Positions 4,363 through 25,084 of a DNA stretch of 64,000 nucleotides are shown here, piece after piece (position 1 is the stretch's first letter; every line of letters starts with the position of its first letter). The notes beneath the pieces were generated by a model. That model did no database searches. It worked only from the letters and a program-made list of their open reading frames with translations, and was not told where the DNA came from. The translations under genes and the position numbers were made by a program. The stretch lies in IMG/VR virus record IMGVR_UViG_3300042261_002390, positions 62,001 to 126,000 of that record. One strand, 5' to 3'.

Positions 4363-5369
4363 TACTAATTTCATACGGTACTCGCCCGGAGTACATCAAA
4401 CTTAAATCAATATTCAAGGAATTTGATAAAGTAGGTATTAAATATTGTACATTATTTACCGGGCAACATAAAGATTTACTTAACGAACATTCACCTACAA
4501 TATCGTTGAATATTGATGATAGTAGCAAAATTCTTGATAATAGATTAAATAATATTGTATCGTCCATAGTTAAAAGTAATTTTTTCTATAGTCTTAGTGA
4601 ATTTCCAACATATGTGATGGTAATGGGTGATACTACATCTGCAATGGCTGTTGCATTATCAGCATTCCATCACGGTATTAAAGTAATTCATCTTGAAGCC
4701 GGGTTAAGAACATATGATAATCAAAATCCATACCCTGAAGAAATTAATCGACGAATTATATCGCAAATCACTTCAATTCATCTATGCCCAACTAATTGGA
4801 ATCTTCAGAATTTAAAAAATGAGTCGATTATCATGGAAGAAGCATATGTTGTAGGTAATACTGTGATTGATAATTTATTAGATTACAAAGATAAATGTGA
4901 ATATACTAATAAAGTGTTGATTACACTCCATAGACGTGAAAATCATTCAATAATACGTGAATGGTTTAACGTTATTAACAATATAGCAAAAAATCATCCA
5001 GAAATCGAATTTATCCTCCCGATACATCCAAATCCTAGGGTTCAGGTTCACCGTAATATATTAACAAATGTTAACGTTATTGAGCCGCTTTCTTATGATG
5101 ATATGTTGAATTTATTGGTTAAAACTAAGCTTGTTATTACTGATAGTGGCGGGTTACAAGAAGAATGTAGTTTTTTTAATAAAAGATGTTTAGTCTGTCG
5201 TAAAACCACAGAAAGACCTGAAGCTATTGGATTAAGTAGTATTATGGTTGAAACACCATTATTGTTATCATTGTACTTTGATAAGTATATAAATAATTAC
5301 GAAATTGATTATAAATGTCCGTTTGGAGATGGATATGCAGCAGAAAAAATAGCGGAGATATTAAAATGA
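4359..5369 (+). CDS. wecB: UDP-N-acetylglucosamine 2-epimerase (non-hydrolysing)
   Basis: GTRPEYIK, TGQH, GDTTSA, HLEAGLRT, PEEINR, TLHRREN, TDSGGLQEE, PFGDG. Confidence 0.95.
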   Translation: MILISYGTRPEYIKLKSIFKEFDKVGIKYCTLFTGQHKDLLNEHSPTISLNIDDSSKILDNRLNNIVSSIVKSNFFYSLSEFPTYVMVMGDTTSAMAVALSAFHHGIKVIHLEAGLRTYDNQNPYPEEINRRIISQITSIHLCPTNWNLQNLKNESIIMEEAYVVGNTVIDNLLDYKDKCEYTNKVLITLHRRENHSIIREWFNVINNIAKNHPEIEFILPIHPNPRVQVHRNILTNVNVIEPLSYDDMLNLLVKTKLVITDSGGLQEECSFFNKRCLVCRKTTERPEAIGLSSIMVETPLLLSLYFDKYINNYEIDYKCPFGDGYAAEKIAEILK

Positions 5370-19459: not shown

Positions 19460-19591
19460 GGGGAAGTATGCGAATAAAAAACAAAGAATATAGTCGTAAT
19501 ACTCCTACGGAGAACTGGTTATGTTTTCAGTAAAGGTACAGCAATTTGTGTTGAAAACAAATGTTTGTGGGTTCAACTCCCGCCTTCCCCA
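19460..19591 (+). ncRNA. tRNA-like RNA 1 (anticodon-position UGA) with ~60-nt D-loop insertion
   Basis: Acceptor GGGGAAG/CTTCCCC, D stem TGC/GCA, anticodon stem TTTGT/ACAAA with loop GTTGAAA, 5-nt variable loop, T arm GTGGG-TTCAACT-CCCGC. Confidence 0.8.
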
Positions 19592-19642
19592 CCGATGGTC
19601 ATTTTTTGTACTTTTTAGTATTTATATTAAAAAGTATATAAT

Positions 19643-20314
19643 ATGGCTAGAATTGAAAAAAAATATCATTTCATATATAAAACAACATGTATGTTAAATG
19701 ATAGGTATTATTTTGGAATGCATTCTACCGACAATATAAATGACGGATATATGGGTTCTGGAAGAAGATTAAAACGTTCATTGAAAAAATATGGTAAAGA
19801 AAATCATATCGTTGAAATTATTGAATTTTTACCTGACAGAAAATCACTTTTTCTTAGAGAAAAAGAAATTGTTAGCTTAAATGAAATTGCTAAAAAAAAT
19901 TGCATGAATTTAAAAGTTGGCGGTGATGGTGGGTTCTCTAGTGAACAGCATAGAATAAAATTTTTTGAAAAAGCAAGTGAATATTCAAAAATTAATTCAT
20001 TACTTGCTGTTAAACGTAAAGTCGAAATCCGTAAAAACAATCCAAATTGGCAGTTGGATTTAAATCGTAAGACTGGTGAAGGTGTTAGAAAATATTATCG
20101 TGATAATAATATTGTTGGTAGTTTTTATGGAAAAAAACACAGTGAACTATCTAAGGAAAAAATCAGTAAAACAAATAAAATAGTTCTTGCTGGAACAGGT
20201 AATTCACAATATGGCACACGTTGGATTACAAACGATATTGATAATAAAAAAATAATGAAAAATGATAATCTGCCAGATGGTTGGCATTATGGTAGAATTA
20301 TAAAGAAATTATAA
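19643..20314 (+). CDS. GIY-YIG (Seg-like) homing endonuclease with NUMOD3-like motif
   Basis: FIYKTT...YYFGMHST...DGYMGSG, FYGKKHSELSKEKIS. Confidence 0.85.
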   Translation: MARIEKKYHFIYKTTCMLNDRYYFGMHSTDNINDGYMGSGRRLKRSLKKYGKENHIVEIIEFLPDRKSLFLREKEIVSLNEIAKKNCMNLKVGGDGGFSSEQHRIKFFEKASEYSKINSLLAVKRKVEIRKNNPNWQLDLNRKTGEGVRKYYRDNNIVGSFYGKKHSELSKEKISKTNKIVLAGTGNSQYGTRWITNDIDNKKIMKNDNLPDGWHYGRIIKKL

Positions 20315-20335
20315 AGGAAACTGATTGTTATTTCA

Positions 20336-20408
20336 GTACAATTAACTCAGTGGGTAGAGTATTTGCCTATCAAGCGAAACGCCGTTGGTTCAAATCCAGC
20401 ATTGTAAA
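20336..20408 (+). tRNA. Atypical tRNA, anticodon ATC (Asp-like), possibly non-functional
   Basis: Cloverleaf: GTACAAT/ATTGTAA (1:72 mismatch), D ACTC/GAGT, anticodon TTTGC-CTATCAA-GCGAA, T GTTGG-TTCAAAT-CCAGC; no CCA. Confidence 0.7.
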
Positions 20409-20448
20409 ACAATAGATAACAAACGAAATATCCTTTTTAAAAATATAT

Positions 20449-20532
20449 TGTGGGATAGTGTAATTGGTAACATATTGGGCTCATAACCCAAAGACAGTAA
20501 TGCTAGTGAAGGTTCGATTCCTTCTCCCGCTA
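20449..20532 (+). tRNA. tRNA-Met(CAT), initiator-type, with 16-nt variable region
   Basis: 1:72 mismatch, anticodon stem TTGGG/CCCAA with three G-C pairs, loop CTCATAA, T arm GAAGG-TTCGATT-CCTTC. Confidence 0.85.
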
Positions 20533-20580
20533 CCGGGGTCATTTTTGAAATTACAAGTATTTATATGAAAAATATAAATC

Positions 20581-21249
20581 ATGAGTAATTACAATGACAA
20601 CAAAAAGTATCATTTCATATATAAGACAACTAATATTCTAAATGGTTCATATTATATTGGAATGCATTCCACAAATAATATCAGCGATGGGTATTTGGGA
20701 AGTGGAAAAAGAATAAAACGTTCTTTGAAGAAATATGGTAAAGATAACTTCAAATTTGAAATTTTAGAATTTACTGAAAATCGTAAAATGCTGATTGAGC
20801 GAGAAATTGCTATAGTAAACTCCGATGTCTTGAAAGATAAACTATGTTTAAACTTGAAAGAAGGTGGTTGTGGTGGATTATGTAATGAAACACATTCTAA
20901 AAATTTTCATGCTGCTGGTGGAAGAAAAGTACGTGAGTATTTTAGAGAAATTCACGCCAATAGAATGAAAAATGATGCTGAATATCATGAAAAATGGAAA
21001 ATTGCGTATAAAAATGCAATTGGCTCTCGTAAAGGAGACACTAATCCATTTTATGGTAGAAAACATGATGATGAGTGGAAAAAAACAATTAGCGATATTA
21101 TGAGAGTAAAACAATCAGGAACTAATAATTCTCAATATAATACTTGTTGGATTACTAATGAAATTGAGAATAGGAAAATAAAAAAAGATGAAATAGTTCC
21201 AGTTGGTTGGAGATTCGGTAGAAATTTGAAGATATTGAAAAAACAATGA
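20581..21249 (+). CDS. GIY-YIG (Seg-like) homing endonuclease, paralog of the 19643 ORF
   Basis: FIYKTT...YYIGMHST...DGYLGSG, NPFYGRKH, NSQY.T.WITN. Confidence 0.85.
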   Translation: MSNYNDNKKYHFIYKTTNILNGSYYIGMHSTNNISDGYLGSGKRIKRSLKKYGKDNFKFEILEFTENRKMLIEREIAIVNSDVLKDKLCLNLKEGGCGGLCNETHSKNFHAAGGRKVREYFREIHANRMKNDAEYHEKWKIAYKNAIGSRKGDTNPFYGRKHDDEWKKTISDIMRVKQSGTNNSQYNTCWITNEIENRKIKKDEIVPVGWRFGRNLKILKKQ

Positions 21250-21373
21250 ATTAGTAAGCGATTCAGTAATGGAGAGAGTAATTGCTGCAAATTGTTGAAC
21301 ATGAAAAGGCTGGTAGACCGTAAATTATTTCTCAGTAGTGCCTCACATAACCTCAATGACAATTACTAATTTA
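21247..21373 (+). ncRNA. Candidate structured RNA
   Basis: AATTAGTAA (21249-57) pairs with TTACTAATT (21363-71); inner GAGAGAGTAATT/AATTATTTCTC helix. Confidence 0.4.
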
Positions 21374-21384
21374 TTCAAACAAAT

Positions 21385-21519
21385 GGAGAAGTAGCAAAGT
21401 GATAAACAAGAAATACTATCTCAATGCTCTTGAAAAAAGAGAACTAATGGTGTTTTCAGTAAAGGTAATGCAATTGTGTTGAAAACAATCTATCGGTGGT
21501 TCAAATCCATCCTTCTCCG
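21385..21519 (+). ncRNA. tRNA-like RNA 2 (anticodon-position UGA) with ~60-nt D-loop insertion
   Basis: Acceptor GGAGAAG/CTTCTCC, D stem GCA/TGC, anticodon ATTGT-GTTGAAA-ACAAT, T arm GGTGG-TTCAAAT-CCATC; same architecture as 19460-19591. Confidence 0.8.
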
Positions 21520-21523
21520 CATT

Positions 21524-21880
21524 ATGCTCAGTCAAGCCTCTTATTCGAAAGAATAATGTAACTGGGCGAAAGACCTGATTCCCGCTAGTCCCTGAAGAAA
21601 TTCAAACTGGTGGGTACGGTTTAAAAATATTAGGGAAAACGTAAAGTGTTTACAGTAACATCGGTTCGACTCCGATATTGTTCGCCAAAAAATGAGCGAT
21701 TAGCCAAGTGGTTAAGGCACAAGTCCGTTAAACTTGCAAAAGAAAAGAATACTTTAAAATTGTTCCCAAAACTTATTGATTTTTGGCTGTTGGTGTCAGT
21801 GTTTTTTTAAAAAATGGGGCGCACCACCTAACATTTGATGGTTAAGAATGGTTTTTCGTCGCTAACGAGTGACTTTTTTT
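21524..21880 (+). ncRNA. Structured RNA containing a circularly permuted tRNA-like module (21660-21736); Y RNA (YrlA)-like candidate
   Basis: T arm, then acceptor 3' strand + GCCA, 6-nt linker, acceptor 5' strand, D arm, GTT anticodon hairpin; extra hairpins; ends at a terminator. Confidence 0.6.
21858..21880 (+). terminator. Intrinsic terminator
   Basis: GTCGCT-aacg-AGTGAC plus T7. Confidence 0.7.
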
Positions 21881-21895
21881 CAAAAAAGATGAATT

Positions 21896-22087
21896 TTAAC
21901 TATGAAAAAGGAGTAGATAGTGAAGCCGGGAGAGCGTTAACTCAAGGGTGCACACTAAGGATAAGCAGCAATGCTCAACTCTCTAATGGTGTGTGAAGCA
22001 CATATATTGTCGCCCGAAAGGATAAAAGAATGGCGTATGTGGTTAGCAAGATTCCTGATAAAAGCTATTGAGTAGTTAATTTTTTTT
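21896..22087 (+). ncRNA. Candidate ~185-nt structured RNA
   Basis: Ends pair (TTAACTA/TAGTTAA); internal CACATA/TATGTG; GCAA- and GAAA-capped hairpins; T8 after. Confidence 0.45.
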
Positions 22088-22269
22088 ACTGAAGAACTTG
22101 TTGTGTATGCAGTAAATTGAAATTTGTCGCCCATGATGGTGGCGACACAAACTTACAAGATACAACAGAACTTCTTCTCAATATTAGAGAAGCAGTGTTT
22201 TTCTGAAAAAACAAGTGGGCGGGGAACTCGACGTGGAAACGTGTCGAAGTACTTCGTCCATTTTTTTTT
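22088..22269 (+). ncRNA. Candidate structured RNA(s) or leader upstream of the vWA gene
   Basis: TTGTTGTGT/ATACAACAG, GTCGCC/GGCGAC, CTTCTC/GAGAAG; then a long hairpin TGGGCGGGG...CTTCGTCCA plus T9. Confidence 0.5.
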
Positions 22270-22349
22270 GTAGTTATTGTAACATTTTTGAATTCAATTC
22301 GTATAATTGATTCTGAATAAAATAAATTGAATTAAATTAATATTGTAGT

Positions 22350-23975
22350 ATGGAAAAATTGGTATTGACACAAAACATGGTTACATCAGTCAAGAAAGCA
22401 TTGATTGATGGATTAACTATTGCTTCTGGTGCTAAGAGCGTTGCTACTTATTACCATAGCAAAGATGAACAGATGAAGGCAATACAAGCACAAATTAAAG
22501 GCATGTATGGTCTTTCGAAAGAACTCCCCTTGATTGTTGCAACACAAAAAGGAGCAACAGGACGATTTGTATCTGAAGTATTATTAAATGAATTTAAAAA
22601 TACTTTAAAGGGTGGCGCATGTAATATTGTCAATCCGATTGATTGGTATGACAATGGTTTGGGTGATAAGGTATTGTTAAATGCTTTGAGAAATTTATCT
22701 GAGAATGGTTTACCTTATGTTCTCCGTTTATATGTTGATTTGAAAAACGCCAAAGTTAATAATGAAAGGTCGAGGAAAATCTTTCTTGGTTTCATTTGGG
22801 GTCAGCCAAATCTTGAATTTTATTCGATGAAATATCGTAATAAAATTGCCGATGTATTGAAGCATATTTATGGTCAAAAGAAAACATCAATATTGCTCTC
22901 AATTGCTCAAAAAGCCGTTAATGGTGGCGAATTTATTGCTACAGATAAGGAAATGAAGATTGCCAATGATTTGTTGCTTAAATATTATGATGGTAATGCG
23001 ATTAAAGCATTTAAATTGTTATTGTTCTTATTTAAAAAGGATAAGGGTGTTAACTATGATGCTGCTGAATTTTCATTGTTGAGCGAATACCAGAAAGCTA
23101 AGGTAAATATTAGTTTAGCAAAGCTTGTACCTGAAGAAGTATTGATTGGTTTGATTTCGAATAAAAATCATCCTCAATATAGTACAATGTGGTCAACTGA
23201 TGCACAAAAGGCTGCAACGAAGGCAATGATTCGTAAAAATGTTGAAGTTACGTCGGTAAATCAACAAGTACGTCAAACTAAATCAACAGCTAAGTTAGGT
23301 GTTGAAAAAGAGGTTGAACTTGAAAAAGCTACCGATTTCTTGGCACTTTACAAAACTGCATATGAAAATGGTTGGACTGATGAATTGAAAATTGCAATTG
23401 GTAAACTCGCAGTTAAGAAGAAAATTCAAGGATTCTTATATCAGAACATCGGTATTATCGTTGACGATAGTGCTTCTATGACTGGTAACAAGAATGAGTC
23501 TAAGAATACACCGAGAGCAATTGCCGAATTTACTGGTTTAGTACTTCAAAATTCTGCAAGGAATTCTGTTGTTGCACGTACAAGTGAATTTAGTACAGAT
23601 TTAGCATCAGCATTTATCCAATTATTGAAAGATGAAAATGATAGTCAATATGATGCTATTTTCATCATTACCGATGGTTATGAAAATGCTTACGATGGAT
23701 TGACGAATGAAGTTATCTCAATCTGGCAAGCTGAAACTGGTAGAAGTCTACCAATATTCCAGATTTCGCCTATTACTAGTGCCGAAATGGGTGCTAATGT
23801 GAGAAAGATTGGTGATAGTGTTGTTCCTATGTCGGTGAATAATCCATCTGCAATTCAGCCACAAATCAATGCGAGATTGCTTGAAATTGACGCTAAACTT
23901 TGGTTGGAAAATGAAGTACGTCAATTGGAATCAATTTCGATTACAAGAAAAGCAAAAATTAGTGTAAACGTTTAA
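22350..23975 (+). CDS. vWA-domain protein with long helical N-terminus, putative Ro60/TROVE-like RNA-binding protein
   Basis: C-terminal MIDAS: IIVDDSASM, STD, FIITDGYEN; 541 aa, Ro60-like size and layout. The TROVE assignment is inferred. Confidence 0.65.
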   Translation: MEKLVLTQNMVTSVKKALIDGLTIASGAKSVATYYHSKDEQMKAIQAQIKGMYGLSKELPLIVATQKGATGRFVSEVLLNEFKNTLKGGACNIVNPIDWYDNGLGDKVLLNALRNLSENGLPYVLRLYVDLKNAKVNNERSRKIFLGFIWGQPNLEFYSMKYRNKIADVLKHIYGQKKTSILLSIAQKAVNGGEFIATDKEMKIANDLLLKYYDGNAIKAFKLLLFLFKKDKGVNYDAAEFSLLSEYQKAKVNISLAKLVPEEVLIGLISNKNHPQYSTMWSTDAQKAATKAMIRKNVEVTSVNQQVRQTKSTAKLGVEKEVELEKATDFLALYKTAYENGWTDELKIAIGKLAVKKKIQGFLYQNIGIIVDDSASMTGNKNESKNTPRAIAEFTGLVLQNSARNSVVARTSEFSTDLASAFIQLLKDENDSQYDAIFIITDGYENAYDGLTNEVISIWQAETGRSLPIFQISPITSAEMGANVRKIGDSVVPMSVNNPSAIQPQINARLLEIDAKLWLENEVRQLESISITRKAKISVNV

Positions 23976-23986
23976 AATTTGAACAT

Positions 23987-25084
23987 ATGAATACTAGAGA
24001 TTTTTCAGAATTATTAAAAGGTTGTCGTCCTGTTAAGGATAGTGATGGCAACATCGTAGTTCAGTCAATAATGAACATGCAGATTGTATGTTTAACTACT
24101 GATAATGAGTTTTCGTTGGATAGTCGTTTCGGTAATCCTTTAACTGCTTTGAAAGCAGGTAACTCTTCATATGGTCAAATTAATTTTACTAATAAAGAGA
24201 ATAAGGAAATTATCGTTCCTACTCAAATGGCTGTTATGACCAAACAAACTGCCCAAAACCACGGTATGACTAAAGCAGGTTATATTCCCGCTAAAGGAAA
24301 TATTACATTTAGGGATGCTGGTTGTGTTCAAGGTTCTCAAGGCGGTCATTTCAGTGACACTCAGGAGTTCCGTATGTTGCCAATATCAATGCGTGAAATG
24401 GTACTTGATACTATTGGTACTCCGGAATCATATCAAAGAATTTATCCTGCAATTAATAAATTGGGTGTTGACACACAATCAAATTCAGGTAGTTATTTGA
24501 ATGTTTATTTCGATAAATACGATAAGAAACTTGAACAGTTCATCGCACATTTTGAACGTCCAAAAAACCTTATTGGTATTGTTGTGTTGGTTGATGACGA
24601 AATTGTTGGTATCGATAAGTTTCCATCATTCACATATGCAGAACAGGTTTGGGATATGATGATTCGTGACTGTTATGGGTCACTTGCAATTATTTCTGAA
24701 TTGAAATCTAAGAAATCACGTGCAGTATTTGCTGAATCATATAATGAAGTGAAGAAACATCGTGAAGATGTTGTAACTATGCTTGAAAAAGCGTTGTTAA
24801 AGACAAAACAGAAAATGACTGCAAGTGTTCAGGAAAAGATTCAAGAATTGCTTGATTTAACTTTCGATGCAACTCCTGATACTGTAGGTAACCCAACAGC
24901 AGGTAGTCATGCACCAAAATCATATGTCCTTAAAACTGAAGGATATGTTGGTCAGGTATTAACTGAAAACGAATACAACCATATGGTTAGTATCGTTAAA
25001 AGGGAAAGATTTGACCCAACTGCATTTCGTCAGGTAAACGAGTTAAGAAATAAAGCTCGTAAACAAGACAGATTCACATTATAA
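23987..25084 (+). CDS. ARPP-family-like (DUF6569-type) protein
   Basis: KQ.AQNH, AGCVQGSQGG, IGIVVLVDDEIVGID, RDCYG recall ARPP domains; 11 nt after the vWA gene. Confidence 0.55.
   Translation: MNTRDFSELLKGCRPVKDSDGNIVVQSIMNMQIVCLTTDNEFSLDSRFGNPLTALKAGNSSYGQINFTNKENKEIIVPTQMAVMTKQTAQNHGMTKAGYIPAKGNITFRDAGCVQGSQGGHFSDTQEFRMLPISMREMVLDTIGTPESYQRIYPAINKLGVDTQSNSGSYLNVYFDKYDKKLEQFIAHFERPKNLIGIVVLVDDEIVGIDKFPSFTYAEQVWDMMIRDCYGSLAIISELKSKKSRAVFAESYNEVKKHREDVVTMLEKALLKTKQKMTASVQEKIQELLDLTFDATPDTVGNPTAGSHAPKSYVLKTEGYVGQVLTENEYNHMVSIVKRERFDPTAFRQVNELRNKARKQDRFTL

What the first reader, a model, noticed from the sequence alone, without database searches (positions are those of the whole stretch)
21660..21736. 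Circularly permuted tRNA-like module: 3' half encoded before the 5' half
Seen, in order: T arm ATCGG-TTCGACT-CCGAT; acceptor 3' strand ATTGTTC + G + CCA; linker AAAAAT; acceptor 5' strand GAGCGAT (7/7 pairs, two GU); TA; D arm GCC-AAGTGGTTAA-GGC; anticodon arm CAAGT-CCGTTAA-ACTTG (GUU, matching G73 for Asn). I found no upstream D arm for the 3' half and no downstream T arm for the 5' half. A second ATTGTTCCCA occurs at 21759-68. Established: T-acceptor-D order is the YrlA Y-RNA topology; permuted tRNA genes are known from some algae and archaea. Inference: a YrlA-like mimic, or a permuted tRNA-Asn needing cleavage and ligation.
Basis: partly seen in the sequence, partly recalled or inferred. 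Interest (0 to 1): 0.87.

Follow-up and report, generated by a model that had tools for sequence, protein, structure and literature searches.

The report
Permuted tRNA-like Y RNA beside cryptic phage Ro60
The "back-to-front tRNA" is real: it is the tRNA-shaped core of a conserved 135-base non-coding RNA in huge phages, it sits just upstream of a very divergent, unannotated Ro60-like gene, and it is best read as a new variant of the known YrlA-type Y RNAs rather than as a tRNA gene.

Summary
Re-ordering the two halves gives an ARAGORN tRNA-Asn(GUU) in 63 of 64 junction variants. The module is not debris and not a decoding tRNA. It is the core of a 135-nt RNA (21633-21767) found once in each of 62 related huge-phage loci. 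Its fold has strong covariation support: 98% of cells paired, 22 of 37 pairs with compensatory changes, and the Levitt 15:48 pair switching G:C to A:U without exception. The RNA's two ends pair into a conserved stem that leaves the cloverleaf at the variable-arm position. The acceptor is a closed hairpin, usually carrying RCCA. An anticodon-like arm is kept, but its loop varies freely (23 different 7-mers, U33 in only 31 of 46).

The 541-aa ORF 580 nt downstream has no Pfam or PDB sequence match. It folds (pLDDT 93.7) into a Ro60 ring plus a vWA/MIDAS domain, and the top 11 PDB fold hits are all Ro60. The same terminal-stem scaffold carries other cargoes in the same array, and it occurs once per genome, always upstream of the Ro-like gene.

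Verdict: a new variant of YrlA-type Y RNA, partnered with a cryptic Ro60 family. Ro binding and function are inferred, not shown.

The parts
21633..21767 (+). Whole ncRNA (135 nt): terminal handle plus permuted tRNA-like domain, here called 'type C'
   Evidence: Covariance model R1 scores 131.3 bits here and gives one full-length hit of 118-155 bits in each of 62 related loci. Single-sequence MFE z-score is -3.3.
21633..21637 (+). P1a 5' strand GGGAA; pairs with TTCCC at 21763-21767
   Evidence: Invariant G-C/A-U pairs in 46 of 46 sequences.
21638..21640 (+). Invariant AAC that opens the internal loop between P1a and P1b
   Evidence: Invariant columns A6, A7, C8. AAC also follows P1a in the paralogous scaffold RNAs.
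21642..21651 (+). P1b 5' strand (TAAAGTGTTT); pairs with 21747-21756
   Evidence: 10 pairs, 95.7% of cells paired, 3 pairs with compensatory changes. The core GTGTTT/AATAC(T) is nearly invariant.
21652..21658 (+). Conserved single-stranded ACAGTAA junction
   Evidence: A22, G23, A25 and A26 are invariant. The same (A/T)CAGTAA follows P1b in every scaffold paralogue.
21659..21659 (+). C at tRNA position 48; Levitt partner of G15 (21708)
   Evidence: Column 32 against column 96: C:G in 39 sequences, U:A in 7, no exception.
21660..21676 (+). T arm (5-bp stem, loop TTCGACT)
   Evidence: GGTTCRANTCC is conserved in 46 of 46. Three of 5 pairs have compensatory changes.
21677..21700 (+). Closed acceptor hairpin: 3' strand 21677-21683, G73 at 21684, CCA at 21685-21687, loop to 21693, 5' strand 21694-21700
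   Evidence: 8 of 8 pairs show compensatory changes; this count includes position 73 pairing with -1. NCCA is present in 33 of 46 sequences. There are three loop classes.
21701..21719 (+). U8, A9, D arm (GCC-AAGTGGTTAA-GGC) and A26
   Evidence: U8, G10 and A14 are invariant and GG(18/19) is nearly so. The D stem covaries between A-U and C-G.
21720..21736 (+). Anticodon-like arm: 5-bp stem with 7-nt loop CCGTTAA
   Evidence: 5 of 5 pairs have compensatory changes and the loop is always 7 nt. Its sequence is free: 23 variants, and position 34 has 2.0 bits of entropy, the most variable column.
21737..21746 (+). A-rich single-stranded linker between the anticodon-like arm and P1b 3' strand
   Evidence: Variable in sequence but A-rich in all homologues and in all scaffold paralogues.
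21747..21767 (+).
22350..23975 (+). 541-aa divergent Ro60-like protein (helical repeat ring plus vWA/MIDAS); presumed protein partner
   Evidence: AF2 model has pLDDT 93.7 and pTM 0.91. The top 11 Foldseek PDB hits are all Ro60/Rsr (E 1e-7, TM 0.50-0.55, about 600 columns). BFVD hits include phage Ro-like/TROVE proteins. The D372-x-S374-x-S376 motif and (T)D442-G443 are conserved. No Pfam or PDB sequence hit.
23987..25084 (+). ARPP-1 domain protein; conserved neighbour of the Ro-like gene
   Evidence: Pfam PF20208, E 3e-14. The Ro-like/ARPP pair recurs in relatives with 25-29% identity.
20314..20435 (+). Paralogous scaffold RNA 'type A': the same handle enclosing a complete tRNA cloverleaf (20336-20408, anticodon AUC)
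   Evidence: R1 scores 35 bits across model positions 1-141. The orthologue alignment shows a conserved body and a variable anticodon.
21395..21522 (+). Paralogous RNA 'element 1b': tRNA-like with the scaffold inserted in the D loop and its distal end closed by a hairpin
   Evidence: Read from the sequence. Rfam gives a partial tRNA hit of 26.7 bits. Conserved in more than 30 loci.
19460..19593 (+). Second copy of the element-1 type RNA ('element 1a')
   Evidence: Read from the sequence. Rfam gives a weak tRNA hit at 19517-19591.
22090..22178 (+). Paralogous scaffold RNA ('proximal'): the handle enclosing a GC-rich hairpin
   Evidence: R1 scores 30 bits. Folds of 7 orthologues agree. A terminator-like hairpin lies at 22174-22192.

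Best explanation
Bases 21660-21736 are the tRNA-shaped domain of a 135-nt non-coding RNA (21633-21767, + strand) of a huge AT-rich phage.

The RNA is a circularly permuted tRNA mimic. Its 5' and 3' ends pair into a conserved two-part stem: P1a GGGAA/UUCCC, an internal loop with an invariant AAC, P1b AAGUGUUU/AAAUACUU, then an invariant ACAGUAA. This stem enters the cloverleaf where a class-II tRNA would have its long variable arm. The acceptor stem is closed by a loop. The T arm, D arm, elbow nucleotides and Levitt pair are kept, so the domain should fold into the tRNA L-shape.

I propose that it works as a Y RNA. The terminal stem would be the handle bound by the divergent Ro60-like protein encoded 580 nt downstream. 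The tRNA-like domain would be the effector module, recruiting a tRNA-recognising factor (a processing or modification enzyme, a nuclease such as PNPase, or a host anticodon nuclease) to the Ro ring. The resulting Ro RNP would serve RNA quality control, RNA repair or counter-defence during infection.

Shown here: the RNA's conservation and fold, the Ro60 fold of the neighbouring protein, and the strict genomic linkage of the scaffold RNAs to that gene. Inferred: transcription and the exact ends, Ro binding through the handle, the identity of the effector, and the biological role.
For: (1) Structure. The RNAalifold consensus and the pair counts on 46 distinct homologues give 98.1% of cells paired, 22 of 37 pairs with changes on both sides, and a covariation score of 0.439 against 0.085 or less for slid controls. 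No shuffle in 500 reaches the observed values.

(2) tRNA tertiary signature. U8, A14, GG18/19 and T-loop GGUUCRANUCC are invariant or nearly so. The Levitt pair is G15:C48 in 39 sequences and A15:U48 in 7, with no exception. This is the same covariation reported for YrlA (PMC4201824).

(3) Protein neighbour. The 541-aa ORF folds with pLDDT 93.7 and pTM 0.91. Its top 11 PDB fold matches are all Ro60/Rsr, including phage phiLo Ro60, over about 600 columns (E 1e-7, TM 0.50-0.55), followed by vWA domains. BFVD hits include phage Ro-like/TROVE proteins. The MIDAS motif DxSxS is conserved across 93 diverse homologues.

(4) Linkage. There is one strong R1 hit per related locus, always upstream of the Ro-like gene. 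Scaffold motifs occur once per contig, even in contigs of 178-357 kb. In 31 of 43 newly fetched loci they lie 380-2900 nt upstream of a Ro-like gene on the same strand. The other 12 loci are cut off on the downstream side.

(5) Deep conservation of the association. Relatives whose Ro-like protein is only 25-29% identical again have scaffold RNAs in the gap upstream. These include a T arm, ACCA-bearing acceptor hairpin, D arm module in L081 at 4642-4730.

(6) The handle is the shared part. Four or more paralogous RNAs in the array keep P1a-AAC-P1b-(A/U)CAGUAA ... A-rich-P1b'-P1a' while the cargo differs. P1a and P1b differ between paralogue classes in a compensatory way. The handle and the T/D loops are the lowest-entropy parts of the RNA. 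This is the Y-RNA plan: a conserved Ro-binding stem formed by the termini plus a variable effector module (PMC4201824; PMC12135203).
Against: No sequence method links the protein to TROVE. Pfam gives nothing for it or for 10 distant relatives, and PDB profile searches give nothing. The Ro assignment therefore rests on a predicted fold with TM about 0.5.

The YrlA/Yrl Ro-binding motif (GNCGAAN0-1G / CGAA) is not conserved in the handle: positions 9-11 vary. No Rfam Y-RNA family matches at E up to 10.

There are no expression data, so the RNA ends are inferred from the structure only. The encoded RCCA in 33 of 46 copies and the 7-bp acceptor hint at a role for a free acceptor end, which the plain Y-RNA model does not need. 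The fixed 7-nt anticodon-like loop with a maximally variable position 34 is also left unexplained.
Confidence: 0.7

Rival explanations
1. A processed, two-piece tRNA-like RNA with a free acceptor end. RNase P cuts 5' of G21694 and the loop is trimmed back to the encoded CCA (21685-21687). This leaves a nicked tRNA mimic held together by the acceptor stem. It could then be recognised, and perhaps aminoacylated, like a tRNA while still carrying the handle. This is a variant of the best explanation rather than its opposite.
For: The 7-bp acceptor plus 5-bp T stem gives the 12-bp RNase P substrate geometry. RCCA directly follows the acceptor 3' strand in 33 of 46 homologues. One class has an AU-rich loop of 17-24 nt that looks like a tRNA spacer. 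The distant L081 copy also has ACCA. M. smegmatis YrlA, which also has a 7-bp stem, is cleaved by RNase P and receives CCA in vivo (PMC4201824).
Against: Seven of 46 homologues close the acceptor with a tight CAAUG-type loop and six more lack CCA, so a free CCA end cannot be required family-wide. The discriminator pairs with U-1 in 35 of 46, which extends the helix and disfavours canonical RNase P cleavage. Anticodon identity is not conserved, so no single synthetase would be served.
Confidence: 0.12
2. A Ro-independent tRNA decoy or processing element. The scaffold stems are processing or stability signals of a polycistronic RNA cluster. The permuted tRNA mimic titrates or decoys a tRNA-directed enzyme, for example a host anticodon nuclease or RNase P, on its own. 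The adjacent Ro-like gene is merely co-located.
For: The array also contains real-looking tRNAs. The anticodon-like loops of type A and type C RNAs are the most variable positions on otherwise conserved bodies, as expected for decoys that track variable host nucleases. No canonical Ro-binding motif is present.
Against: Scaffold RNAs occur once per genome and, wherever the downstream DNA is held, always just upstream of the Ro-like gene on the same strand. The linkage survives to 25-29% protein identity. The most conserved part of the RNA is the handle, not the anticodon arm.
Confidence: 0.12
3. A genuine circularly permuted tRNA-Asn gene, of the kind known from red algae and archaea. Its transcript would be circularised and re-opened to give a decoding tRNA-Asn(GUU).
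For: The re-ordered halves are called tRNA-Asn(gtt) by ARAGORN. G73 and GUU fit Asn identity, and CCA is encoded.
Against: The loop is CCGUUAA with C33 instead of the universal U33. Homologues carry 23 different loop 7-mers, and 15 of 46 lack U33. The termini form a long conserved stem with an internal loop, not a 3-4-3 bulge-helix-bulge. No splicing endonuclease is expected in a bacteriophage. Joining the ends would leave an insert of about 50 nt in the variable region. Some homologues lack CCA and any linker to remove.
Confidence: 0.03
4. Non-functional debris: remnants of two tandem tRNA genes scrambled by the neighbouring GIY-YIG homing endonucleases.
For: Two seg-like homing endonuclease genes sit in the same RNA cluster. 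A dimeric-tRNA origin has been proposed for YrlA (10.1101/312249).
Against: The same architecture is present in 62 loci that mostly lack these endonuclease genes, with 98% pairing and abundant compensatory changes. This is purifying selection on an RNA fold.
Confidence: 0.01

Closest known systems
YrlA-type bacterial/phage Y RNAs (S. Typhimurium, M. smegmatis; Chen et al. 2014, PMC4201824; Wang et al. 2018, 10.1101/312249)
   Same: A circularly permuted tRNA mimic in the order T arm, closed acceptor stem-loop, D arm. Conserved elbow nucleotides and a covarying Levitt 15:48 pair. The 5' and 3' ends pair into a stem. Encoded next to a Ro60-type gene, often with sister Y RNAs. Like M. smegmatis YrlA, it has a 7-bp acceptor stem.
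   Different: The handle joins at the variable-arm position (43|44-48), not in place of the anticodon stem. A full 5-bp/7-nt anticodon-like arm is retained, whereas YrlA lacks an anticodon loop. There is no V hairpin. The GNCGAAN0-1G motif is not conserved. RCCA is encoded inside the acceptor loop in most copies. The partner protein is not recognisable as TROVE by sequence.
Thermus phage phiLo phiRo60 with Yrl1/Yrl2 (PMC12135203)
   Same: A phage-encoded Ro60 with several Y-like RNAs encoded directly upstream of its gene. phiRo60 is among the fold matches (9l5y, 9kop).
   Different: The phiLo Yrls were defined by a CGAA motif in a stem-bulge-stem and are not described as tRNA-like. phiRo60 is a recognisable Ro60 homologue found by a database search, whereas the present family has no Pfam hit.
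D. radiodurans Yrn1 (PMC4201824)
   Same: A Y RNA with a T-arm-like hairpin and a possible anticodon-like arm with a 5-bp stem.
   Different: Yrn1 has a 6-nt 'anticodon' loop, no clear D arm and a different orientation. Both strands of its Ro-binding helix resemble those of metazoan Y RNAs.
Circularly permuted tRNA genes of Cyanidioschyzon merolae and some archaea (own knowledge: Soma et al. 2007)
   Same: The 3' half (T arm, acceptor 3' strand, CCA) is encoded upstream of the 5' half, joined by a short linker.
   Different: Those genes yield decoding tRNAs through a bulge-helix-bulge, splicing endonuclease and ligase. Here there is no bulge-helix-bulge, the anticodon is unconstrained, and the termini form a conserved protein-handle-like stem.
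Two-piece (permuted) tmRNA of alpha-proteobacteria and others (own knowledge: Keiler et al. 2000)
   Same: A permuted gene order with the acceptor 3' piece and T arm first, and CCA followed by an intervening segment that is removed.
   Different: There is no tag reading frame and there are no pseudoknots. ARAGORN finds no tmRNA. A complete D arm and anticodon-like arm are present here.

Membership tests
YrlA-type Y RNA | Encoded adjacent to a Ro60/Rsr (TROVE plus vWA) gene | tested here: met
   Met at fold level only. The ORF 580 nt downstream gives Ro60 as its top 11 Foldseek PDB hits, matches phage Ro-like/TROVE proteins in BFVD, and has a conserved MIDAS motif. The Pfam TROVE model does not hit.
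YrlA-type Y RNA | Order T arm, closed acceptor-like stem-loop, D arm (a circularly permuted tRNA) | tested here: met
   All 8 acceptor pairs have compensatory changes.
YrlA-type Y RNA | tRNA tertiary-interaction nucleotides conserved, with a covarying Levitt pair | tested here: met
   U8, A14, GG18/19 and the T loop are conserved. G15:C48 occurs in 39 sequences and A15:U48 in 7, with no exception.
YrlA-type Y RNA | 5' and 3' ends pair into a stem that carries the Ro-binding module | tested here: met
   P1a (5 bp, invariant) plus P1b (10 bp) are formed by the termini. Whether Ro binds there was not tested.
YrlA-type Y RNA | Conserved 5' motif GNCGAAN0-1G (the CGAA Ro-contact motif) | tested here: not met
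   Positions 9-11 after GGGAAAAC vary (GAA, GUA, UGA, UUA, UAA). CGAA is present in only part of the family.
YrlA-type Y RNA | Handle replaces the anticodon arm (no anticodon loop); a V region precedes the T arm | tested here: not met
   A covarying 5-bp/7-nt anticodon-like hairpin follows the D arm, and the handle joins between it and the T arm. The distant relative L081 has the join at 26|27 and also keeps an anticodon arm.
YrlA-type Y RNA | Match to a curated Y-RNA covariance model | tested here: inconclusive
   There is no Rfam hit other than weak tRNA at E up to 10. I could not verify that Rfam 15 holds a YrlA model, and I had no positive control.
YrlA-type Y RNA | Physical association with Ro60; tRNA-type modifications (psi55, D) | not testable with these tools
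   This needs RIP or EMSA and modification mapping.
Ro60/TROVE protein (for the 541-aa neighbour) | Helical-repeat ring plus C-terminal vWA domain with MIDAS | tested here: met
   In the AF2 model (pLDDT 93.7) residues 1-356 are all-alpha and residues 366-527 are alpha/beta. TM is 0.50-0.55 to 1yvp, 2i91 and 9nfa. D372, S374, S376, D442 and G443 are conserved.
Ro60/TROVE protein (for the 541-aa neighbour) | Sequence match to Pfam TROVE or to solved Ro60 chains | tested here: not met
   The only signals are a faint VWA_2 hit (E 0.16) and a weak CLCA vWA hit (E 0.7).
Canonical tRNA gene | Detected by tRNA finders in genomic order | tested here: not met
   ARAGORN finds none. Rfam tRNA scores 28.8 bits, below the 29-bit threshold, and lacks a T arm.
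Circularly permuted tRNA gene (algal/archaeal type) | 3' half upstream of 5' half, and the re-ordered halves give a tRNA | tested here: met
   ARAGORN calls tRNA-Asn(gtt) in 63 of 64 re-orderings.
Circularly permuted tRNA gene (algal/archaeal type) | Conserved decodable anticodon loop (U33, fixed anticodon) among orthologues | tested here: not met
   23 different loop 7-mers. U33 is present in 31 of 46; the window copy has C33.
Circularly permuted tRNA gene (algal/archaeal type) | Bulge-helix-bulge at the precursor termini for the splicing endonuclease | tested here: not met
   The termini form P1a (5 bp), an asymmetric internal loop and P1b (10 bp), not a 3-4-3 bulge-helix-bulge.
Two-piece tmRNA | Tag reading frame and pseudoknots; detection by ARAGORN | tested here: not met
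   No tmRNA is called in the window or the loci.

The most novel reading that the evidence does not exclude
Huge phages carry a previously unrecognised Ro60 system: a sequence-cryptic Ro60-like protein, an ARPP-domain partner, and an array of 4-6 modular RNAs built from one Ro-type handle grafted onto tRNA bodies in several circular permutations. The graft points seen are around a whole tRNA, in the D loop, at the variable arm (the finding), and at position 26|27 in distant relatives. In this reading the anticodon-like loops are under diversifying rather than relaxed selection. The RNAs would then act as anticodon-specific baits or sensors that hand host anticodon nucleases, or the damaged tRNAs they produce, to the Ro/ARPP machinery. 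That would make the array a programmable counter-defence RNP.
Probability: 0.15. Interest if true: 0.85.

Novelty: new variant of a known kind. Interest (0 to 1): 0.62.

Why it matters
Y RNAs that mimic tRNA are known, but what their tRNA-like domain binds is still an open question. This family offers a natural experiment on that question. The same conserved handle is attached to tRNA bodies at different points, and the elbow is kept while the anticodon loop is left free. That points to the elbow and handle as the functional surfaces.

The finding also uncovers a large family of Ro60-fold proteins in huge phages: 380 clusters at 50% identity, all labelled hypothetical where a source gives any name. 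Sequence annotation misses this family entirely. Each member examined is paired with an ARPP-domain gene. If the RNP is confirmed, Ro/Y-RNA biology would extend to a major group of uncultivated phages, with defined RNAs and proteins available for binding and structural work.

Tried and rejected
- **Natural permuted intron-exon (group I).** GNRA-type hairpins lie at 21523-21632 and there is structured sequence downstream. However, Rfam finds no intron, and the flanks resolve into the terminal stem of the RNA itself and separate small conserved elements. Dropped.
- **Two-piece tmRNA.** No ARAGORN tmRNA call, no tag frame. Dropped.
- **Sequence-level link of the 541-aa protein to TROVE.** I tried Pfam at E up to 10, phmmer and two profile searches against PDB chains, Pfam on 10 distant family members, and a word-indexed homologue search (close relatives only, none with a Pfam domain, and named 'hypothetical protein' wherever a source gives a name). 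All were negative. Only fold comparison worked.
- **First AF2 model from 31 close homologues.** It was mediocre (pLDDT 70, pTM 0.47, TM about 0.4 to Ro60). It was replaced by a model from a 93-sequence alignment.
- **Cultured relatives.** Nucleotide and protein searches of INPHARED found no cultured relative. The hits were one uncultured 462-kb phage for the protein, and segB-like homing endonuclease genes for the DNA.
- **Positive control for an Rfam YrlA model.** I could not obtain one. There was no accession in PMC12135203 and no supplement held for PMC4201824.
- **Class-II tRNA origin.** From memory, the D arm resembles that of class-II (Ser/Leu) tRNAs, which would fit the handle sitting at the variable-arm position. 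The phage tRNA-Ser genes at hand did not show a close match, so this stays an untested lead.
- **The ORF 21646-21810 (54 aa) overlapping the RNA.** Dismissed: indels in the acceptor loop are not multiples of three, and the substitution pattern is compensatory at the RNA level.
Full report
**1. The observation**

The window is 30% G+C with almost all ORFs on the + strand. It is identical to part of a 246-kb IMG/VR viral contig. Its neighbours are phage replication genes: a RecA/UvsX-like protein, a 5'-3' exonuclease and a DnaB-like helicase.

- T arm, 21660-21676.
- Acceptor 3' strand plus G-CCA, 21677-21687.
- A-rich linker.
- Acceptor 5' strand, 21694-21700.
- TA.
- D arm, 21703-21718.
- Anticodon-like arm, 21720-21736.
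- A second ATTGTTCCCA at 21759-21768.

In genomic order, ARAGORN sees no tRNA. The Rfam tRNA model reaches 28.8 bits against a threshold of 29, and only by skipping the T arm. After re-ordering the halves, ARAGORN calls tRNA-Asn(gtt) for 63 of 64 junction choices.

**2. It is a conserved RNA, and larger than reported**

The 541-aa ORF downstream (22350-23975) retrieved 73 related viral loci, from contigs up to 365 kb. BLAST of the 1.1-kb non-coding stretch 21250-22350 against them showed that 21620-21770 is conserved in most loci at 66-90% identity.

An alignment of 46 distinct homologues (A2) defines a 135-160-nt unit. It reads: GGGAAAAC, three variable bases, AAGUGUUU, ACAGUAA, T arm, acceptor 3' strand, loop, acceptor 5' strand, UA, D arm, A, a 5-bp/7-nt hairpin, an A-rich linker, AAAUACUUU, UUCCC.

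RNAalifold predicts 36 pairs, of which 21 have compensatory changes. Counting a named structure that also includes the Levitt pair gives the following:
- 98.1% of cells paired, against 39-54% when the partners are slid by 1-3 columns.
- 22 of 37 pairs with changes on both sides.
- A covariation score of 0.439, against 0.085 or less for slid controls.
- No shuffle in 500 reaches the observed values.

The acceptor hairpin covaries at all 8 pairs, the anticodon-like stem at all 5, the T stem at 3 of 5 and the D stem at 2 of 3.

A covariance model built from A2 (R1) finds exactly one full-length copy per related locus. That is 62 loci at 118-155 bits and the window copy at 131 bits. The copy always lies upstream of the 541-aa gene.

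Its resemblance to the acceptor strand is not shared by the homologues.

**3. It is a tRNA mimic, not a tRNA**

The tRNA core is intact:
- U8, G10 and A14 are invariant, GG18/19 nearly so.
- The T loop GGUUCRANUCC is present in all 46.
- The base before the T stem (position 48) and D-loop position 15 are C:G in 39 sequences and U:A in 7, with no exception. The same Levitt-pair covariation was used to argue that YrlA folds like tRNA (PMC4201824).

The decoding part is not conserved:
- The 7-nt loop has 23 different sequences.
- U33 occurs in only 31 of 46 sequences. The window copy has C33.
- Position 34 has 2.0 bits of entropy, the most variable column of the RNA.

The acceptor is a hairpin, with three loop classes:
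- A short RCCA-plus-A/U loop, as in the window.
- A 17-24-nt loop, mostly beginning with ACCA and mostly AU-rich.
- A tight CAAUG-type loop with no CCA (7 sequences).

NCCA is present in 33 of 46. The discriminator pairs with U-1 in 35 of 46.

These features rule out a decoding permuted tRNA-Asn. They leave open a processed form with a free CCA end in part of the family, as was shown for M. smegmatis YrlA (PMC4201824).

**4. The neighbour is a cryptic Ro60**

Sequence methods give nothing for the 541-aa protein:
- No PHROG family and no Pfam family, apart from a faint VWA_2 hit (E 0.16) at residues 369-404.
- No PDB chain, by phmmer or by two profile searches.
- No Pfam domain among the best 120 listed of 373 word-indexed homologues. 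Where a source names them, they are called hypothetical protein.
- Nothing relevant in 10 distant members of the 380-cluster family.

A first AF2 model from 31 close homologues was mediocre (pLDDT 70). Even so, its 12 best PDB fold hits were all Ro60/Rsr/TROVE.

A second model used a 93-sequence alignment reaching down to 20% identity. It has pLDDT 93.7 and pTM 0.91. Its 11 best PDB matches are all Ro60: Xenopus and human Ro60, D. radiodurans Rsr and phage phiLo Ro60. They align over about 600 columns at E down to 1e-7 and TM 0.50-0.55. vWA domains follow.

In BFVD the best named hits are a Gordonia phage Ro-like RNA-binding protein and TROVE-domain proteins.

The DxSxS MIDAS motif (D372, S374, S376) and D442-G443 are the most conserved residues of the whole family.

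I therefore treat the protein as a Ro60-fold protein. The assignment rests on predicted structure.

**5. The handle is shared by a small array of RNAs and is tied to the Ro-like gene**

Weaker R1 hits (25-46 bits, spanning the whole model) led to paralogous RNAs with the same frame. The frame is: P1a, AAC, P1b, (A/U)CAGUAA, cargo, A-rich linker, P1b', P1a'.

The cargo differs between paralogues:
- A complete tRNA cloverleaf whose anticodon differs from genome to genome. In the window this is 20314-20435, enclosing the tRNA at 20336-20408.
- A small hairpin, giving a unit of about 76 nt. This type is not in the window.
- A GC-rich hairpin (window 22090-22178).
- The permuted tRNA mimic of the finding.

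A further type is a tRNA-like RNA with the same frame inserted in its D loop, and with the frame's distal end closed by a hairpin. The window has two copies, at 19460-19593 and 21395-21522. This is the same parts list in another circular permutation.

P1a and P1b differ between classes in a compensatory way. P1a is GGGAA/UUCCC, AAGGA/UCCUU or AGAAGAA/UUCUUCU. P1b is AAGUGUUU/AAAUACUU, UUGUUAUU/AAUAACAA or AUAGUUUUU/AAAAACUA.

Within the 64-kb window, R1 hits are confined to the region upstream of the Ro-like gene.

I scanned IMG/VR with two scaffold motifs. Each gave one match per contig, even in contigs of 178-357 kb. In 31 of 43 newly fetched loci a Ro-like gene lies 380-2900 nt downstream on the same strand. 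The other 12 loci are cut off on that side.

The association survives deep divergence. Three lineages have a Ro-like protein only 25-29% identical (L076, L078, and L081 with L083). In these the Ro-like/ARPP-1 gene pair is conserved, and scaffold RNAs lie upstream.

In L081 (4642-4730) the module T arm, 7-bp acceptor hairpin with ACCA, D arm recurs. There, however, an anticodon arm lies before the variable loop and T arm. The handle therefore joins at position 26|27, rather than after position 43 as in the window family.

**6. Mechanism, and how sure I am**

The plan is the defining plan of Y RNAs: a conserved stem formed by the RNA's ends, a variable module in the middle, several paralogues, and a position next to a Ro60 gene. 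The order T arm, closed acceptor, D arm is the YrlA solution (PMC4201824). [quoted passage not shown] Phage Ro60 with upstream Y-like RNAs is also established for phage phiLo, where the RNP engages host PNPase (PMC12135203). Jumbo phages are known to carry TROVE proteins occasionally (PMC7824862).

I therefore commit to the following model. The terminal stem is the Ro handle. The tRNA-shaped domain is the effector-binding module. The RNP acts in RNA surveillance, RNA repair or counter-defence.

My confidence in each step:
- That this is a selected, tRNA-shaped non-coding RNA: about 0.97.
- That it is the partner of the Ro-like protein in a Y-RNA-type RNP: about 0.7.
- The effector and the biological role: unknown.

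Points that do not fit neatly:
- The canonical CGAA-type Ro motif is absent.
- RCCA is encoded in two thirds of the copies.
- The anticodon-like arm has a rigidly kept geometry but a free sequence.

**7. Comparison and novelty**

The element works like a YrlA, but it fails two of the family's structural definitions: where the handle joins, and the absence of an anticodon loop. It also fails the sequence motif. It is not matched by any Rfam model other than weak tRNA, and its protein partner is invisible to TROVE profiles. I file it as a new variant of a known kind.

Three aspects appear to be new. I found no description of them in the searchable literature:
- The modular handle grafted onto tRNA bodies in several permutations.
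- The Ro-like/ARPP gene pair.
- The size of this unannotated Ro60-fold family in huge phages.

Noticed in passing
window 20314-20435 (tRNA at 20336-20408); related loci L003-L073 about 1-2 kb upstream of the Ro-like gene: A complete tRNA cloverleaf is enclosed by the same terminal-stem scaffold. Its body is clearly orthologous between genomes, yet ARAGORN reads a different anticodon in almost every lineage: AUC, GUC, UAA, CAA, UUU, UCU, UUC, UGA, UCA, UUA, CGC, GUU, UAU, CCU, GCA. No CCA is encoded. This could reflect relaxed or diversifying selection on the anticodon loop; it was not resolved.
   Followed up: partly
window 19460-19593 and 21395-21522: Two copies of a tRNA-like RNA with an insert of about 60 nt in the D loop. 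The insert is the same scaffold (A-rich linker, P1b', P1a closed by a hairpin, AAC, P1b, UCAGUAA). The anticodon loop is mostly GUUGAAA. The acceptor end is open and has no encoded CCA. This type is conserved in more than 30 related loci, sometimes in two copies. ARAGORN miscalls parts of it as tRNA-Leu(taa) in L016 and L063.
   Followed up: partly
window 20449-20534: A tRNA with anticodon CAU (59 bits to Rfam tRNA) is conserved next to the type-A RNA in nearly all related loci. In this genome and some others it has an extended 13-nt variable region containing ACAGUAA, the same motif that precedes the T arm in the permuted RNA.
   Followed up: no
window 19643-20314 and 20581-21249: Two GIY-YIG/NUMOD3 seg-like homing endonuclease genes (closest DNA matches are T4 segB and Aeromonas phage seg genes) are inserted between the RNA genes of the array. 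They are absent from most related loci, which recalls segB sitting in the T4 tRNA cluster.
   Followed up: partly
window 23987-25084; L076 6497-7534; L078 6605-7621; L081 6662-7669: An ARPP-1/ARPP-2 domain gene immediately follows the Ro-like gene in every lineage examined, down to 25% Ro-like identity. ARPP is a predicted enzyme linked to ADP-ribose/sugar chemistry in conflict systems (PMC9503650). A Ro-like/ARPP pairing is not among the ARPP neighbourhoods listed in that paper.
   Followed up: partly
L081 4400-4970 (and L083): A relative whose Ro-like protein is only about 25% identical has four scaffold RNAs in the 650-nt gap upstream of the gene. Two enclose tRNAs (Pro-UGG, Arg-UCU). One is a permuted tRNA mimic with the break at 26|27, so the anticodon arm (UCU) precedes the variable loop and T arm. 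One is a mini version followed by a U-run.
   Followed up: partly
L078 4520-4740: A scaffold RNA in which a T arm and acceptor 3' strand (CUCCGGU) seem to pair with GCCGGAG about 110 nt downstream. A second scaffold-like unit appears to be nested inside the acceptor loop. This was read by eye only.
   Followed up: no
window 21265-21361, 21523-21632, 21780-21887: Further conserved non-coding blocks lie between the RNAs. One is a CCUCACAUAA-containing element. One has two GNRA-capped hairpins plus a UUCCCG...CGGGUA stem. One is a block ending in an intrinsic-terminator-like hairpin with a T-run at 21858-21880. Many related loci have a terminator hairpin directly after the permuted RNA; the window copy lacks it.
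   Followed up: no
window 22279-22307: The only good sigma-70-like promoter match in 21200-22400 on the + strand (GTAACA-17-TATAAT) lies just upstream of the Ro-like ORF. This suggests the gene may be transcribed separately from the RNA array.
   Followed up: no
L076 2486-4008 (LR756500.1, 462-kb uncultured phage): Upstream of the distant Ro-like/ARPP pair lie an R2K-clade ATP-grasp protein, a scaffold-enclosed tRNA-Leu(UAA) and a CYTH-domain protein. These may be additional components of an RNA- or nucleotide-directed system.
   Followed up: no
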